A stretch of 63,586 nucleotides of DNA, the filler included, from Octopus bimaculoides (Eukaryota), in the NCBI RefSeq assembly GCF_001194135.2. It is 3 parts of 2 records of this genome, joined end to end, with 100 filler letters (N's around TTAATTAATTAA, not from the genome) between each part and the next. Parts side by side here need not be neighbours in the genome. Positions count along the whole stretch, not along the records: positions 1 to 30,243 come from NC_069001.1; 2 more parts are not named here. One strand, 5' to 3'. Positions 21,580 through 28,948 of this stretch are shown piece after piece. Position 1 is the stretch's first letter, and each line of letters begins with the position of its first letter. Under the pieces are notes generated by a model that made no database searches, was not told the origin of the DNA, and worked only from the letters and a program-made list of their open reading frames with translations. A program made the translations under genes and the position numbers.

Positions 21580-21645
21580 ATGACAGACAAGGGACTGTTG
21601 CCATGGCAACAGAAGATCACTGTGAAGATAATGGTGGGAATCTAA
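21580..21645 (+). promoter_or_regulatory. Out-of-frame uORF overlapping the start of paralog A (MTDKGLLPWQQKITVKIMVGI*)
   Basis: ATG 23 nt upstream of the main ATG and downstream of the acceptor at 21531; stop TAA at 21643-21645. Confidence 0.5.
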
Positions 21646-22559
21646 CCAACTTAATAGTGAATTATATCCCACAAAGTCTTTCCAATGAAGAATTCCGAGC
21701 CATGTTCCTGACCATTGGTCCAATTAAGTCATCAAAAATAATTCAAGACAGGGCAACAGGATACAGCTATGGATTTGGATTTGTTGATTACGAACACCCA
21801 GAAGATGCTGCAAGAGCAGTTCAAACTTTAAATGGACTTCATATTGAGAACAAAAGAATCAAAGTGGCTCTTGCTAGGCCCAGTGGACTTGGAGTGAAGG
21901 GGGCCAATGTTTATGTGAGCCACTTACCAAATCATTATGCTCAGAGCGACCTTGTTAAGCTCTTTGAACCTTATGGTATTATCATCCGTTCCAGAATAAT
22001 GACTCATCCTAACACTAACCAATCTAAGGGAGTAGGCTTTGTTTTGTATGATCAGAAAAAAATGGCAGAAGCTGCCATTGCTGACTTGAATCAAACTATA
22101 CCTCCAGGTGGTAGTGAGCCAATAATAGTAAAATTTGCTAATGAAGCTCCCAATTCTAAAAAAACTCGCCCTCCACATGAACAATACATGAACAATAATA
22201 ACAGCATACAACAAACTTTCTCCACGCCTATGCTCATGCGTAATGAACGATTTACAAGTCCGGTGCCTGTCAATTACTCTCCTAACAACCCCAACCCTAA
22301 CCCAAATAATGACATGTCTAACAGTCCAGTGTTGTTTATCTACAACACTGGCAATATGGATGAATCTGACCTGGGCCAGCTTTTCTGCGGCTTTGGTACT
22401 GTGCAAAAGGCCAATATTGTGCGTGTACATCAGAAGACAAAAGGTTATGGCTTTGTCACGATGGCTAACCAACACGAAGCAGAAAATGCTGTCGGCAGGC
22501 TCAATGGATACCGCTATCGCGGTTGGGGACCTCTCCAAGTCTCTTTTAAAAACAAATAA
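21603..22559 (+). CDS. ELAV/Hu/Sex-lethal family RNA-binding protein with three RRMs (divergent paralog A), intron-free CDS, 318 aa
   Basis: RRM1 TNLIVNYIPQ...GYSYGFGFVDY, RRM2 NVYVSHLP...KGVGFV, hinge, RRM3 LFIYN...KGYGFVTM...LNGY...LQVSFK. Strong start context GCCATGG, in-frame TAG upstream at 21555-21557, and a splice acceptor TTTTCTAG ending at 21531. Confidence 0.95.
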   Translation: MATEDHCEDNGGNLTNLIVNYIPQSLSNEEFRAMFLTIGPIKSSKIIQDRATGYSYGFGFVDYEHPEDAARAVQTLNGLHIENKRIKVALARPSGLGVKGANVYVSHLPNHYAQSDLVKLFEPYGIIIRSRIMTHPNTNQSKGVGFVLYDQKKMAEAAIADLNQTIPPGGSEPIIVKFANEAPNSKKTRPPHEQYMNNNNSIQQTFSTPMLMRNERFTSPVPVNYSPNNPNPNPNNDMSNSPVLFIYNTGNMDESDLGQLFCGFGTVQKANIVRVHQKTKGYGFVTMANQHEAENAVGRLNGYRYRGWGPLQVSFKNK

Positions 22560-23329
22560 TTTACTTGAGTCTTATGGGTTATTTTCATTTACACCCCCCC
22601 TCTTTTTTTTATTTTTTACTTTTTTAGTTAAAAATATCTATACTCTTATTTTGTTTTACTATTAATTTACTTTTCGGCTTCTTTACTGTGGAATTTAAAA
22701 AACAAAAAGTGGCAATTGAAGCTGCTACCAACTGTGTATCACTTTGGAGGTGATTTCTCCTCCCCTTCCCTCTCAAAGGTTACAAAGTTATCAGTAATTT
22801 TAAGAAATGGCAGCTTCCCTTTCTTTTAACTTTATTATTACATATTGTTCTTAAGCTAATTAGTGGCAATACAATAGTTGTTGCATTTTCTTTTATTATG
22901 ATTATTATTATTTCTTTATAGTTACCTTGACTTATTTTCAAAAGAACTTAAAAAATGGTAACATCTTGTATTGATAGATGTGTGTTTAAAAAAAAAAAAG
23001 CAAAAACAAAAACTGATACTAAGGGATTAGCATGTTTTGTGGCTTCAATACACAAACGCAGCAGTTTGACAAAAAAAAAAACAAAAAAATAGCACCCCTA
23101 ATGTAATTTCATTTCACCTCCCCCTTTTTGTTTTTAATTTATTGAATTTTTAAATTTATTTTTATACGTTTTCCTCCCAAAAACCTTTTTTCTCCCCTTC
23201 CTCTCTCTCTCTCTCTTTTTAGTAAGAACGCAAGCATTCTTGCAAATGTCCATATTAAGGCAGAAAATATTGGTTTGACTGGTCCACTATTCATTATTCA
23301 ATTATGTTAGGTGTCTTCATGAATGTATG

Positions 23330-26800: not shown

Positions 26801-28021
26801 TCCCTCCCAATGACTTTTTACTCGATGGATAGGTTGCTCACAAAACAGCATATTTAATGTAACAGTTTCCCAGAGCTATTTCTTTTAACATAAAATGGAA
26901 ATTCTTTCAATTAAAATTACATTACCCAATTTTTTTTCTTAAATAAATCCTATGGCTAATATATCTTTAACACTATCGTGTATCTGGTTAGAAATAGTTC
27001 CTAACTAATCACCAAATATAAAGCAAGCAGCTGTTATCTTTAGTTGTAAAATTAAAAAAACTTACTGATGCACTACCTATCAAGCATTTAATTAGAAATT
27101 TTGTAAAGTTTTAGTCAAGTGAATTTAAATATATTACATAATATATATATAAATATATAACAACTCTTAACCAAAATTATTAAAAATTAAACTAGGCATG
27201 GAAGTTTATTTTTCAACAATTCAGTTATTCTTTGAAATATTTAAAAATCTTACACAAGTATTTGGAAAAAAAAAAGAAAGTCTCGTACACAAACTTCACA
27301 CAGGCAAAACACAAATATAAACACTCACACAACCCTAAGCAAACAATTGAACAACTCAAAAACAGTAAATATTGTTACTGCATATTAAAGCTATTAGGAC
27401 CTTATGAAATTTATAAAAAAAAAAAATGCATACCGGGATAATGAGGATATTAGCTTAAATCAAGACAAGTGACAGCTTTCATGTGCAGTAAAGATTGTTT
27501 TGAGTGTGCTCAGTGATAACATTTTCATAGCTAATTCTGATAGACAGAGAGAAAATTAAGACAAACAAAAAAAATACTTCGCTAAAAGCGATTTATGTTT
27601 TCTAAGATACATAATGTATTTTTGATAAAATGTTTCAACAAGTAAAACCTATTTGGTTTACAGTAAATAGCAATAAATTGTAAACTAAATCTCCAGTCAA
27701 TGTTGACTGGAGTTTGTTTTTTCTTTTTCTTTTCTTTTTTTTGCAATGACAAGGGTTTATTATGGAAATAGAAAAAAAAAATATGAGAGGAGGAGAAAAA
27801 AAAAACTCATGAGAAAAAAAAAATAAATGGGAAATGAGAGGAAGGAAAGGGAAGGGGGAAATCCCAGGATACACCATAACATTTTATTTCATGGCTTTTT
27901 TAAAACCTATAATGTATGTCCTTCAGCATGAAAATTTAATGATTAAGAAAAAAAAATGTAATGGGAGGGATTTACAGAAAAAAATGTTATTTTAAAAATA
28001 AGGGGAATTTCCTAGAAATCA

Positions 28022-28948
28022 CTAGTTCTTGAACTTCACTTGCAGAGGTCGACCACAACCAGCATAATCATAGCCATTAAGTCGTGCAATTGCATTCTGA
28101 GCCTCTTGAAGATTGGTCATTGTAACAAAACCATAATTTTTAGATTGTCCCTTTTGGTGATCCCTCATGATGTTGACTTTCTGGACTGTTCCAAAGGGAG
28201 AAAATAATTGCCACAAGGTTTTTTCACAAGAACTGGCTCCAATGTTGTATACAAAAATAACATATCCTCCCTGAGAGAGGCTCAAACCAGAGTTAGGTGT
28301 TGAGTAATTGCCTGTCACTGGATTATAACGGAATCTATTGCCAGGACTTCTCATTGGACCAGGTGCTGGGAAGCATGGAGCAGTATTGATGTAGGGCATT
28401 GCAGGGGGACGTACCTTCTTTGCATTGTCATCAGCAAATTTAATAAGTAGAGCTTCTGTACCACCAGCAGGAACTGTGCCAGTTATTTGGTTTATCGCTT
28501 CCTCAGCTTGCTTCTTCTGATCAAAAAGAACAAAACCAACACCCTTTGACACACCAGTCGCCTGGTCTGTCAAAACTCTTGACTGTATTATTGTTCCAAA
28601 TTGCTGAAAAAGACGTTCCAAGTCCATCTGCTGGTAATGTCTAGGAAGATTTCTAACATATAAATTAGCCCCTTTGATCTCCTCACCACCAGGCCTTGCT
28701 AAAGCAACTTTAATGGTTTTATTCTGCATCTGAAGTCCATTCAATGTTTGCATTGCTCTCTGAGCATCTTCTACATTCTCATAATCAACAAAACCAAAAC
28801 CATAGCTATAGCCAGTGGCTTTGTCTCTGACTATTTTAGCAGATTTGATGGGACCTATGCTTAAAAACATAGAACGAAACTCTTCATCAGTAAGAGTTTG
28901 TGGGATGTAATTAATTATCAGGTTGGTACGCTTGTTGTCCATCTCCAT
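28022..28948 (-). CDS. elav: ELAV/Hu/Sex-lethal family RNA-binding protein with three RRMs (conserved paralog B), intron-free CDS, 308 aa
   Basis: TNLIINYIPQTLTDEEF, ARPGGEEIKGANLYV, GVGFV, hinge GPMR...RFRYNP, and RRM3 IFVYN...LWQLFSPFG...YGFVTMTN...LNGY...LQVKFK. This is the ELAV domain layout. The symbol is family-level; exact orthology (elav1, elav2 or Sxl-like) needs a tree. Confidence 0.96.
   Translation of the reverse strand: MEMDNKRTNLIINYIPQTLTDEEFRSMFLSIGPIKSAKIVRDKATGYSYGFGFVDYENVEDAQRAMQTLNGLQMQNKTIKVALARPGGEEIKGANLYVRNLPRHYQQMDLERLFQQFGTIIQSRVLTDQATGVSKGVGFVLFDQKKQAEEAINQITGTVPAGGTEALLIKFADDNAKKVRPPAMPYINTAPCFPAPGPMRSPGNRFRYNPVTGNYSTPNSGLSLSQGGYVIFVYNIGASSCEKTLWQLFSPFGTVQKVNIMRDHQKGQSKNYGFVTMTNLQEAQNAIARLNGYDYAGCGRPLQVKFKN

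What the first reader, a model, noticed from the sequence alone, without database searches (positions are those of the whole stretch)
21603..28948. Tail-to-tail pair of intron-free ELAV/Sxl-like paralogs evolving asymmetrically
Seen: two three-RRM ORFs on opposite strands, 5.46 kb apart. RRM1 is 61/79 identical (77%), the hinges are much more divergent, and I saw no similarity outside the CDS. B keeps family motifs (GPMR, RFRYNP, LWQLF) while A departs from them. Inference: an old local inverted duplication or retrocopy followed by neofunctionalisation of A. With the 20465 fragment, the locus records at least two inverted duplication events. Whether this pair has been described is unknown to me.
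Basis: partly seen in the sequence, partly recalled or inferred. Interest (0 to 1): 0.72.

Follow-up and report, generated by a model that had tools for sequence, protein, structure and literature searches.

The report
Octopus ELAV2 paralog pair, convergent

Summary
A (21603-22559, +, 318 aa) and B (28022-28948, -, 308 aa) are intact three-RRM ELAV/Hu proteins lying tail-to-tail, 5,462 nt apart; RRM1 is 61/79 identical. The window is Octopus bimaculoides chromosome CM046621.1.

The same convergent pair occurs in O. vulgaris, Argonauta hians and a loliginid-like squid contig, so it predates the octopus-squid split. A and B are sister paralogs inside the lophotrochozoan ELAV2 group: 80% NJ bootstrap plus two unique shared changes.

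A evolves about 3 times faster (about 55 vs 17 unique changes, p about 1e-5), yet both are under strong purifying selection (omega 0.02-0.08) and both are transcribed and spliced.

Corrections: only the coding sequences are intron-free, and that state is ancestral (chiton and bivalve ELAV2 share it), so a retrocopy origin is not supported. Both genes have 5'-UTR introns.

New here:
- B has a conserved internal intron giving a two-RRM isoform. In squid its terminal exon overlaps A's 3' end.
- B's synonymous sites evolve 2-5 times slower than A's.
- A has lost the tryptophan needed for Hu-type RRM3 dimerisation.

The pair is already published as DpELAVL-1 (B) and DpELAVL-2 (A) in Napoli et al.; their primers match these genes exactly. 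Interest is moderate.

The parts
10719..10758 (+). A 5'-UTR exon. The 5' limit is only the contig start. Donor is AAAG|GTTAGT.
   Evidence: Transcript contig L016 nt 1-41 match 10719-10759 and then jump to 21530 onward. The surrounding block 10527-10790 is conserved in Argonauta at 78%.
10759..21531 (+). A 5'-UTR intron, about 10.8 kb, GT...AG.
   Evidence: Junction in L016. Acceptor is TTTTCTAG|GGAG.
20456..20632 (-). Decayed, frameshifted inverted copy of A codons about 51-111 (RRM1 end to RRM2 start), lying inside A's own 5'-UTR intron.
   Evidence: tblastn gives 72-76% identity to A against 53-62% to B. blastn gives 80% over 185 nt to A CDS nt 152-333 and only a 26-nt match to B. It is absent from the Argonauta and squid loci and weak in O. 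vulgaris.
21532..23025 (+). A coding exon. It holds 71 nt of 5' UTR, the whole CDS and at least 466 nt of 3' UTR. The true 3' end was not determined.
   Evidence: Contigs L015-L018 are colinear from 21530 to 22742 or 23025. Conservation with Argonauta continues to about 23599.
21603..22559 (+). A CDS, 318 aa. This is the divergent ELAV2 paralog, the ortholog of DpELAVL-2. RRM1 is 21645-21878, RRM2 21903-22145, the N/P-rich hinge 22146-22328 and RRM3 22329-22550. Gly258 replaces the Hu dimerisation Trp.
24222..24250 (-). Start of the last known exon of the B short isoform (3' UTR). It continues towards A for an unknown distance.
   Evidence: L026 nt 973-1000.
24251..24377 (-). Small 3'-UTR intron of the B short isoform (GT...AG).
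   Evidence: L026 junction.
24378..24452 (-). B alternative exon. It encodes GYGRTRGPHGVYHSHQR followed by a stop at 24399-24401.
   Evidence: L026 is 100% identical. The products are P0172 in O. vulgaris, P0123 in Argonauta and P0127 in squid. The acceptor ttcag|GGTTAYG is conserved as far as squid.
24453..28414 (-). B alternative intron of 3.96 kb. Its first 393 nt are the hinge and RRM3 coding sequence of the long isoform. It also contains the long isoform's 3' UTR and a conserved block at 26546-26934.
27756..27761 (-). Probable poly(A) signal (AATAAA) of the B long isoform. The proximal 3' UTR is U-tract rich and partly conserved as far as squid.
   Evidence: The cleavage site is inferred, not shown.
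28022..28948 (-). B CDS, 308 aa. This is the conservative ELAV2 paralog, the ortholog of DpELAVL-1. RRM1 is 28694-28927, RRM2 28427-28669, the hinge 28265-28426 and RRM3 28031-28264.
28409..28417 (-). Internal 5' splice site AAG|GTACGT inside the B ORF, just after '...DDNAKK'. The exon ends at 28415.
   Evidence: Invariant in all B genes from octopus to squid. Lost in octopod A and weaker in squid A. AAG|GTACGC is present in chiton ELAV2.
28949..28997 (-). Last part of the B 5' UTR. The acceptor AG is at 28998-28999. The upstream 5'-UTR exons lie beyond the window end.
   Evidence: L026, L031 and L019 all join here.

Best explanation
The locus is the coleoid-cephalopod ELAV2 paralog pair, here in Octopus bimaculoides. 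An ancestral molluscan ELAV2 gene already had its whole coding sequence in one exon behind a 5'-UTR intron. It was duplicated in inverted orientation at the DNA level before octopods and squids diverged. The two copies have stayed tail-to-tail, about 5 kb apart, ever since.

B (= DpELAVL-1) is the conservative copy, a canonical three-RRM ELAV/Hu-type binder of U-rich RNA. B makes two products:
- Unspliced message ending at a proximal poly(A) site gives the full three-RRM protein.
- Use of a conserved 5' splice site right after RRM2, joined to an exon 4 kb downstream between the two genes, gives a 195-aa two-RRM protein lacking the hinge and RRM3.
In squid the terminal exon of this short form overlaps A's 3' end on the opposite strand.

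B's synonymous sites are under selection, most strongly in the stretch that is both coding sequence and intron. I infer that this reflects RNA-level control of the splice versus polyadenylation choice, probably auto-regulation or cross-regulation by ELAV proteins as in other RNA-binding-protein genes.

A (= DpELAVL-2) is a functional, expressed, strongly constrained but faster-evolving copy. It keeps all RNP residues, so it still binds RNA. It has remodelled the hinge and replaced the tryptophan that Hu proteins need for RRM3 dimerisation. It therefore probably acts as a non-multimerising variant on the same kind of targets.

Shown: identity, age, arrangement, exon structure, rates and selection.
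Inferred: the RNA-binding specificity, the loss of dimerisation, and the regulatory cause of B's synonymous constraint.
For: Identity:
- Three RRM_1 domains in each protein.
- Best PDB hits are HuD, HuC and HuR.
- Nearest non-cephalopod relatives are proteins named ELAV2 in Aplysia, Capitella and sipunculans.

Source: the window is 100% identical to O. bimaculoides CM046621.1.

Conserved convergent pair:
- O. vulgaris
- Argonauta
- squid contig L013

Sister paralogs:
- NJ bootstrap 80% on the full length.
- NYIPQ occurs in 17/17 cephalopod sequences and 0/154 others.
- The G[CW]G insertion occurs in 13/13 and 0 others.

Ancestral single-exon CDS: chiton and bivalve ELAV2.

Asymmetry:
- Tajima test, about 55 vs 17 unique changes, p 1e-5 to 6e-8, with 8 different outgroups.
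- Stem changes 37 vs 7; variable columns within the crown 50 vs 18.

Selection: omega 0.02-0.08 for both genes.

Expression and splicing:
- L016 for A; L026 and L031 for B, with canonical GT-AG junctions.
- Many RNA contigs.
- Published in situ data, linked to these genes by primer matches.

Short isoform:
- P0172, P0123 and P0127.
- Invariant donor and acceptor.

Overlap with A in squid: L019 and L002.

Synonymous constraint in B:
- Fourfold sites differ at 10/129 in B vs 51/133 in A (octopus-Argonauta, p=2e-9), 33/124 vs 65/108 (octopus-squid) and 17/135 vs 47/122 (squid-squid).
- Local introns diverge normally.
- The constraint is strongest in the hinge and RRM3.

W to G in A: alignment to HuR RRM3. 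HuR W261E abolishes dimerisation but not single-site RNA binding (PMC6344896).
Against: - A+B support drops to 36% when only RRM1-2 is used. Only NJ trees could be built.
- Nautilus could not be examined, so 'cephalopod-specific' is shown only for coleoids.
- The transcript overlap is shown in unstranded squid assemblies, not in octopus. In octopus A's 3' end and the short isoform's 3' end were not mapped.
- No evidence was found for the cause of B's synonymous constraint. There is no excess mRNA folding (z -0.5), no A-to-G mismatch bias, and only slightly stronger codon bias (Nc 50 vs 57).
- Loss of dimerisation in A is extrapolated from human HuR. No RNA-binding or protein-interaction data exist for either protein.
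Confidence: 0.8

Rival explanations
1. One copy is a retrocopy: A or B arose by reverse transcription of a spliced mRNA of the other and inserted next to it.
For: Both CDSs are uninterrupted, and no similarity remains outside the CDS.
Against: - ELAV2 already has a single-exon CDS in chiton and bivalve. Absence of CDS introns therefore says nothing about how the duplication happened.
- Both copies have the same architecture: a 5'-UTR intron whose acceptor lies 49 nt (B) or 71 nt (A) before the ATG.
- The copies are adjacent and inverted, as expected for a local DNA duplication.
- ELAV2 has duplicated locally in other molluscs too.
Confidence: 0.06
2. A is an ancient, separately conserved lineage, for example a Sex-lethal ortholog as the GenBank name of the squid genes suggests, rather than a young sister of B.
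For: - GenBank names both squid orthologs 'sex lethal'.
- Sxl shares the signatures IGPI, TGYS.G, FVD, ARPGGE and NLPR with ELAV2 proteins.
- A+B support is weak on RRM1-2 alone.
Against: - A's best hit outside its own orthologs is B: 58-59% against 52% or less for any other protein.
- Two changes are shared only by A and B among 172 sequences.
- A+B has 80% bootstrap on the full length.
- Sxl attaches between the ELAV1 and ELAV2 groups, not with A.
- A has three RRMs.
- Long-branch attraction would pull A away from the short-branched B, not towards it.
Confidence: 0.04
3. A's faster evolution is only relaxed constraint after subfunctionalisation, for example a narrower expression domain and a dispensable hinge, with no new molecular function.
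For: - Most of A's excess change is in the hinge (pN 0.22-0.26 against 0.00-0.08 in B). That region has become a low-complexity N/P-rich stretch of variable length.
- The RNP residues are unchanged.
- Both genes are expressed in overlapping neural and retinal domains in squid.
Against: - A's omega is still 0.02-0.08.
- 37 changes were fixed on the A stem and then kept for the whole coleoid radiation, including the W to G change at a known interface. That pattern looks like a shift to a new optimum followed by constraint.
- No branch-site test could be run.
Confidence: 0.35
4. B's low synonymous rate is caused by dense A-to-I RNA editing. The double-stranded structures that ADAR needs would constrain the sequence, as reported in general for coleoid neural transcripts. 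Splicing or polyadenylation control would not be the cause.
For: - The constraint covers the whole B CDS and its UTRs.
- B is expressed in the nervous system.
- From my own knowledge, Liscovitch-Brauer et al. 2017 reported that editing slows sequence evolution around edited sites in coleoids.
Against: - The O. bimaculoides RNA contig L026 is 100% identical to the genome over 700 nt.
- L031's 13 mismatches show no A-to-G bias.
- The CDS shows no excess folding.
- The constraint is strongest exactly in the dual exon/intron segment.
- Consensus contigs cannot reveal editing below about 50%, so this rival remains open.
Confidence: 0.25

Closest known systems
DpELAVL-1 and DpELAVL-2, the 'cephalopod-specific ELAVL paralogs' of Doryteuthis pealeii (Napoli et al., bioRxiv 10.1101/2021.10.28.466353). 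Probably the GenBank entries UZQ18773.1 and UZQ18772.1, both named 'sex lethal'.
   Same: These are the same genes. The published ELAVL-1 primer lies in the B ortholog and the ELAVL-2 primer in the A ortholog of squid contig L013, with 0 mismatches. The GenBank proteins fall in the same 90% clusters as the B-type and A-type squid proteins. [quoted passage not shown]
   Different: The paper gives in situ expression and a gene tree only. It does not describe any of the following:
- the convergent genomic arrangement
- its conservation across coleoids
- the exon structure
- the two-RRM isoform
- the transcript overlap
- the rate asymmetry
- the synonymous constraint
- the W to G change
Lophotrochozoan Elav2 (Capitella teleta Elav2, Sepia officinalis Sof-elav2, Aplysia ELAV2-like)
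   Same: A and B nest in this group and share its single-exon CDS. Elav2 is reported to be less neuron-specific than Elav1 (PMC7489019).
   Different: Coleoids have two copies, locked in a convergent pair. One of them (A) is highly derived.
Drosophila elav, fne and Rbp9, and vertebrate HuR, HuB, HuC and HuD
   Same: All have three RRMs, a hinge, U-rich RNA binding, paralog families with unequal rates, and hinge-region alternative splicing. From my own knowledge, ELAV/Hu proteins also regulate their own and each other's transcripts through alternative 3'-end processing and splicing.
   Different: A and B belong to the ELAV2 branch, not the canonical neuronal ELAV1/Hu branch. A lacks the Trp equivalent to HuR W261.
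Sex-lethal (Sxl) of insects
   Same: RRM1-2 of B scores 179 bits against Sxl and shares several signature residues with it. The B short isoform has the two-RRM architecture of Sxl.
   Different: The full-length proteins have a third RRM. Hu proteins score higher (205 bits). Sxl does not group with A or B.
Ultraconserved, alternatively spliced regions in genes for RNA-binding proteins, such as SR-protein 'poison' exons (from my own knowledge: Lareau 2007; Ni 2007)
   Same: Extreme nucleotide conservation, including at synonymous sites, coincides with a regulated alternative splicing event in an RNA-binding-protein gene.
   Different: Here the alternative product is a truncated but probably stable protein. 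Its stop codon is only 21 nt upstream of the last exon junction, so it is not an obvious target for nonsense-mediated decay. Autoregulation is not demonstrated.

Membership tests
ELAV/Hu family | Three RRMs arranged as an RRM1-RRM2 tandem, a hinge and RRM3 | tested here: met
   Pfam RRM_1 is found three times in both proteins. The alignment to Hu and ELAV2 proteins runs the full length.
ELAV/Hu family | Conserved RNP-2 and RNP-1 aromatic residues in all three RRMs | tested here: met
   A has LIVNYIP/YGFGFVDY, NVYVSHL/KGVGFVLY and VLFIYNT/KGYGFVTM. B has the equivalent motifs. The positions of HuR F247/Y249 and F287/F289 are kept.
ELAV/Hu family | Closest solved structures are Hu or ELAV proteins | tested here: met
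   HuD, HuC and HuR at E about 3e-59 to 6e-59. For RRM3, after a multi-domain match to yeast poly(A)-binding protein, the best single-domain matches are HuR RRM3 and Drosophila ELAV RRM3.
ELAV/Hu family | RRM3 helix-1 tryptophan (HuR W261) that mediates dimerisation | tested here: not met
   B has it (LWQLF). A has Gly in all 8 A-type sequences, and no non-cephalopod sequence has LGQLF. This does not remove A from the family, but it marks a functional departure.
ELAV/Hu family | Binding to U-rich or AU-rich RNA | not testable with these tools
   Inferred from the conserved RNP residues only.
Lophotrochozoan ELAV2 subgroup | Groups with named Elav2 proteins of annelids and molluscs, apart from canonical ELAV1/Hu | tested here: met
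   NJ trees. The ELAV1 set (Hu, insects, one Mya protein) separates at 99.7%.
Lophotrochozoan ELAV2 subgroup | Whole CDS in one exon | tested here: met
   A, B, chiton and bivalve ELAV2.
Sex-lethal | Two RRMs only | tested here: not met
   Both full-length proteins have three. Only the B short isoform has two.
Sex-lethal | Groups with Sxl in a phylogeny | tested here: not met
   Sxl attaches on the internode between the ELAV1 and ELAV2 groups. Deeper affinity between Sxl and ELAV2 as a whole remains inconclusive.
Processed retrogene | Intronless copy of an intron-containing parent gene | tested here: not met
   The only candidate parent (the sister copy) and the outgroup ELAV2 genes all have single-exon CDSs.
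Processed retrogene | Poly(A) remnant and target-site duplications | not tested
   The duplication is too old. The flanks share no similarity.
Convergent overlapping gene pair (natural antisense transcripts) | Mature transcripts of the two genes share genomic sequence on opposite strands | tested here: inconclusive
   Met in two squid species. L019 joins the spliced B short isoform to the A ORF in antisense. L002 runs from the A CDS to exactly the B alternative-exon acceptor. These assemblies are unstranded. In octopus the 3' ends were not mapped.

The most novel reading that the evidence does not exclude
The pair is a coupled regulatory module. Full-length ELAV2 protein (B, and perhaps A or ELAV1) would bind the U-rich proximal 3' UTR or the dual exon/intron segment of B pre-mRNA. 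That binding would shift the choice between proximal polyadenylation (three-RRM protein) and splicing to the distal exon (two-RRM, Sxl-like protein lacking the multimerisation domain). Because the distal terminal exon runs antisense into A's 3' end, the same decision would also tune A. This coupling would explain two things: why the tail-to-tail arrangement has been frozen for the whole coleoid radiation, and why B's synonymous sites are under selection.
Probability: 0.2. Interest if true: 0.6.

Novelty: new member of a known kind. Interest (0 to 1): 0.38.

Why it matters
ELAV proteins are the standard markers and regulators of neuronal RNA processing, and cephalopod papers currently disagree on how many elav genes there are and how they relate. 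Duruz et al. 2023 (PMC9839350) explicitly leave this open.

This locus clarifies part of that picture. Coleoids carry a conserved, convergent pair of ELAV2 paralogs in addition to the canonical ELAV reported separately. One paralog is near-frozen, even at silent sites. The other is remodelled at the hinge and at the dimer interface.

The two-RRM isoform and the antisense overlap give concrete, testable handles on post-transcriptional regulation in a group known for unusual RNA biology.

The analysis also corrects database names: 'sex lethal', 'ELAV 1', 'ELAV-like protein 4', and a truncated model for A.

It is a useful refinement rather than a surprise.

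Tried and rejected
- I first took the window to be O. vulgaris, because the 285-aa product P0001 matched. That was wrong: O. vulgaris is only about 95% identical, and the window is O. bimaculoides.
- I tested whether B's 5' UTR carries coding sequence of the upstream Metallophos gene. It has no long ORF, so the 5' UTR is non-coding.
- I tested mRNA self-structure as the cause of B's synonymous constraint. The z-scores are -0.49 for B and -0.61 for A, so there is no signal.
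- I looked for an RNA-editing signature in transcript-versus-genome mismatches and found none at consensus level.
- I tested codon bias. Nc is about 50 for B and about 57 for A, too weak to explain a 2-5-fold rate difference.
- The Rfam scan of the whole window gave no hits.
- Literature searches for 'sex lethal' with Doryteuthis, and for a Sxl/ELAV mollusc phylogeny, found nothing.
- Sxl orthology was not supported.
- Nautilus orthologs could not be identified, because many database hits carry no organism names.

Full report
OBSERVATION

A is 21603-22559 on the plus strand (318 aa). B is 28022-28948 on the minus strand (308 aa). They lie tail-to-tail with 5,462 nt between them. Each has three Pfam RRM_1 domains, and B's best solved-structure matches are HuD, HuC and HuR at E about 1e-59, ahead of Sex-lethal at 1e-51.

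Identity between A and B is 58% overall. By domain it is 61/79 in RRM1, 44/81 in RRM2, 22/64 in the hinge and 49/81 in RRM3. DNA similarity between the two genes is confined to the coding sequence. The motifs GPMR, RFRYNP and LWQLF are kept by B and by most outgroups and are altered in A.

The third piece is real too. At 20456-20632 on the minus strand there is a frameshifted fragment that is 80% identical in DNA to A codons about 51-111 and essentially unrelated to B at the DNA level.

SOURCE

The window is 100% identical to Octopus bimaculoides assembly GCA_001194135.2, chromosome CM046621.1. My first assignment to O. vulgaris was wrong, because that genome is only about 95% identical. The A protein is identical in O. 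bimaculoides, in the O. vulgaris genome and in transcripts of another Octopus species. The B protein is identical in O. bimaculoides, O. vulgaris and O. sinensis.

AGE AND ARRANGEMENT

The same convergent pair, both as uninterrupted ORFs, is present in three further genomes:
- O. vulgaris.
- Argonauta hians, with B at L012 10001-10927 (+) and A at 16530-17516 (-).
- A squid contig whose proteins are nearly identical to those of Doryteuthis pealeii, with A at L013 10001-10951 (+) and B at 15823-16752 (-).

The duplication therefore predates the octopod-decapod split. Nautilus could not be examined.

RELATIONSHIPS

The nearest non-cephalopod relatives of both proteins are the same set of mollusc and annelid proteins, several of them named ELAV2 or Elav2. 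B is 60-67% identical to these and A only 48-52%. A's best hit outside its own orthologs is B.

In a neighbour-joining tree of 54 sequences, A and B form a clade with 80% bootstrap inside the ELAV2 group, and A has a much longer stem. On RRM1-2 alone that support falls to 36%.

Two rare changes settle the question:
- The RNP-2 motif reads NYIPQ in all 17 cephalopod sequences that cover the site and NYLPQ in 151 of the 154 others.
- A G[CW]G insertion before PLQV is present in all 13 full-length cephalopod sequences and in none of the others.

Sex-lethal, added from the PDB alignment, attaches between the ELAV1 and ELAV2 groups and not with A or B. The GenBank name 'sex lethal' for the squid orthologs is therefore not supported as orthology. 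Sxl does share several signature residues with ELAV2 proteins.

ORIGIN

ELAV2 of a chiton (316 aa in 951 nt) and of a freshwater mussel (318 aa in 957 nt) are also single-exon coding sequences. The intron-free CDS is therefore ancestral and says nothing about a retrocopy.

Neither octopus gene is truly intronless. Transcript contigs show that A's coding exon starts at 21532, after a 10.8-kb 5'-UTR intron whose donor follows a small exon at 10719-10758. B's coding exon starts at about 28997, after a 5'-UTR intron whose upstream exons lie beyond the window. The matching architecture and the adjacency indicate a local inverted DNA duplication.

The A-like fragment at 20456-20632 is a much younger, partial, inverted duplication. 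It is absent from the Argonauta and squid loci and is already decayed. It lies inside A's own 5'-UTR intron.

RATES AND SELECTION

Tajima relative-rate tests with eight different outgroups give 43-59 changes unique to A against 13-19 unique to B (p from 1.5e-4 to 6e-8). About 37 changes were fixed on the A stem against 7 on the B stem. Within coleoids, 50 alignment columns vary in A against 18 in B for the same four species.

| Species pair | A protein identity | B protein identity |
|---|---|---|
| Octopus vs squid | 85-87% | 95% |
| Octopus vs Argonauta | 97.2% | 98.1% |
| Squid vs squid (sq1 vs sq2) | 91% | 99.4% |

Both genes are under strong purifying selection, with Nei-Gojobori omega of 0.02-0.08. 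A is expressed. Its full ORF was assembled in well over a hundred public sequencing runs, and it has a spliced 5' UTR. So A is a constrained, functional, faster-evolving copy. Most of its excess change is in the hinge, which has become a low-complexity N/P-rich segment of variable length.

AN UNEXPECTED SECOND ASYMMETRY

B's synonymous sites evolve far more slowly than A's, 5 kb away. Fourfold-degenerate sites that differ:

| Species pair | B | A | Fisher p |
|---|---|---|---|
| O. bimaculoides vs O. vulgaris | 1/133 | 7/135 | 0.066 |
| Octopus vs Argonauta | 10/129 | 51/133 | 2e-9 |
| Octopus vs squid (sq1) | 33/124 | 65/108 | 3e-7 |
| Squid vs squid | 17/135 | 47/122 | 1.5e-6 |

B's own introns diverge at 3-5% between the two Octopus species, the same as A's silent sites, while the B CDS differs at 2 of 927 nt. 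A low regional mutation rate is therefore excluded.

The constraint is strongest from the hinge onward. It is not explained by any of the following:
- overall mRNA folding (z about -0.5 for both genes)
- strong codon bias (Nc 50 vs 57)
- majority-level RNA editing

B IS ALTERNATIVELY SPLICED INSIDE ITS ORF

Octopus, Argonauta and squid all have a 194-195-aa product that follows B through RRM2 ('...DDNAKK') and then ends in a short basic tail. The tail is GYGRTRGPHGVYHSHQR in octopods and GYARMERLYAASHHPRR in squid.

An O. bimaculoides RNA contig that is 100% identical to the window (L026) shows the structure:
- The exon ends at 28415, at the donor AAG|GTACGT.
- A 3.96-kb intron follows.
- An alternative exon lies at 24452-24378, with its stop codon at 24399-24401.
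- A further small 3'-UTR intron follows, and the next exon starts at 24250.

The donor and acceptor sequences are invariant from octopus to squid. A has lost the GT in octopods. Chiton ELAV2 has AAG|GTACGC at the same place.

The hinge and RRM3 coding sequence, where synonymous constraint peaks, is therefore exon in one isoform and intron in the other. The long isoform is documented by unspliced contigs (L031, L010, L011). It probably ends at an AATAAA at 27761-27756, in a U-tract-rich 3' UTR that is partly conserved as far as squid.

TRANSCRIPT OVERLAP

In squid, a 4,879-nt RNA contig (L019) contains the spliced B short isoform. From the alternative exon onward it is colinear with the genome right across the A ORF on the opposite strand. 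Three similar contigs were reported in other runs.

In a second squid species, an A mRNA contig (L002) runs 1.2 kb past A's stop codon and ends exactly at the acceptor of B's alternative exon. It encodes that exon's peptide on the minus strand.

So the terminal exon of the B short isoform overlaps A's 3' end in squid. These assemblies are unstranded, and the equivalent ends were not mapped in octopus.

A'S MOLECULAR DEPARTURE

All RNP aromatic residues are retained in A's three RRMs. However, the tryptophan of RRM3 helix 1 (LWQLF; W261 in HuR) is glycine in all eight A-type sequences and in no non-cephalopod sequence of the set. In HuR, W261E abolishes dimerisation and oligomerisation without changing affinity for a single RNA site, and it lowers binding to cellular targets (PMC6344896).

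I infer that A binds RNA but does not multimerise through RRM3. The B short isoform lacks the hinge and RRM3 altogether. The locus would thus make one multimerising and two non-multimerising ELAV2 forms.

WHAT IS ALREADY KNOWN

Napoli et al. (bioRxiv 10.1101/2021.10.28.466353) report a canonical DpELAV plus 'both cephalopod-specific DpELAVL paralogs', which are expressed in the developing squid nervous system and retina. Their ELAVL-1 primer lies in the B ortholog and their ELAVL-2 primer in the A ortholog of the squid contig, with no mismatches. The gene pair itself is therefore published.

Lophotrochozoan Elav2 is also established (PMC7489019). Duruz et al. 2023 note two neuron-expressed elav genes in Loligo and leave their relationships open.

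I found no description of the following:
- the convergent arrangement and its conservation
- the exon structure
- the two-RRM isoform
- the antisense overlap
- the synonymous constraint
- the W to G change

VERDICT

The old inverted duplication, the asymmetry and the functional status of A all hold. 'Retrocopy', 'intron-free' and 'Sxl-like' do not hold as stated, and neofunctionalisation is unproven.

This is a known pair of a known family with some new and testable anatomy. Interest is moderate.

Noticed in passing
window 28949-28997, continuing in L014 19953-20024 (outside the window): About 100 nt of B's 5' UTR is almost identical between octopus and squid transcripts. It contains a conserved mini-uORF (MYIFTC, then a stop).
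   Followed up: partly
window 20465-20632 against 21754-21935: The decayed A fragment is inverted and sits in A's own 5'-UTR intron. It could pair with the RRM1/RRM2-coding part of the exon in the pre-mRNA (about 185 nt at 80%), which would make a possible ADAR substrate. It is poorly conserved in O. vulgaris, so it is probably neutral.
   Followed up: partly
L012 16530-17516 (Argonauta A): GC3 of A is 0.51 in Argonauta against 0.365 in Octopus and 0.37 in squid, while B stays at 0.33 everywhere. This is a lineage-specific compositional shift in one gene of the pair. It inflates the octopus-Argonauta dS of A.
   Followed up: no
window 22146-22328 (A hinge): The hinge contains an N/P-rich low-complexity repeat whose length differs between species. 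Argonauta has 10 extra residues, including a PPPPPP run and more NP units.
   Followed up: no
window 26546-26934: A non-coding block 84% identical between Octopus and Argonauta, inside B's alternative intron and downstream of the proximal poly(A) signal. It may be an extended 3' UTR or a regulatory element.
   Followed up: no
NJ trees, not a window feature: Chelicerate 'ELAV-like' proteins group with lophotrochozoan ELAV2 rather than with insect and vertebrate ELAV. Sxl shares the signatures IGPI, TGYS.G, FVD, ARPGGE and NLPR with ELAV2. ELAV2 may be older than 'lophotrochozoan-specific', and its relation to Sxl deserves a proper phylogeny.
   Followed up: partly
proteins P0009/P0091, P0018/P0147, P0016/P0048: Potamilus, Haliotis and Bradybaena each have their own pair of ELAV2-group genes, which group by lineage in the tree. 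In Potamilus the two have adjacent locus tags but are more than 10 kb apart. ELAV2 appears to duplicate repeatedly in molluscs.
   Followed up: no
beyond the window end, upstream of B (L027 1-2982): The O. vulgaris annotation places a Metallophos-domain gene (410 aa) on the same strand directly upstream of B, with its range ending 19 nt before B's ATG. B's 5'-UTR exons must interleave with or abut it. B's 5' UTR itself is non-coding.
   Followed up: partly
database records for this locus: There are several annotation problems. The O. vulgaris model of A is truncated to 285 aa (it starts at Met34). The B short isoform is named 'ELAV 1' in O. vulgaris and 'ELAV-like protein 4' in Argonauta. Both squid orthologs are named 'sex lethal' in GenBank.
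   Followed up: yes
window 7001-8820: This kilobase is richer in G+C (0.47) and holds a 186-aa ORF at 7203-7763 (+). An assembly gap of 74 N lies at 8747-8820. No Rfam family matches anywhere in the window.
   Followed up: no
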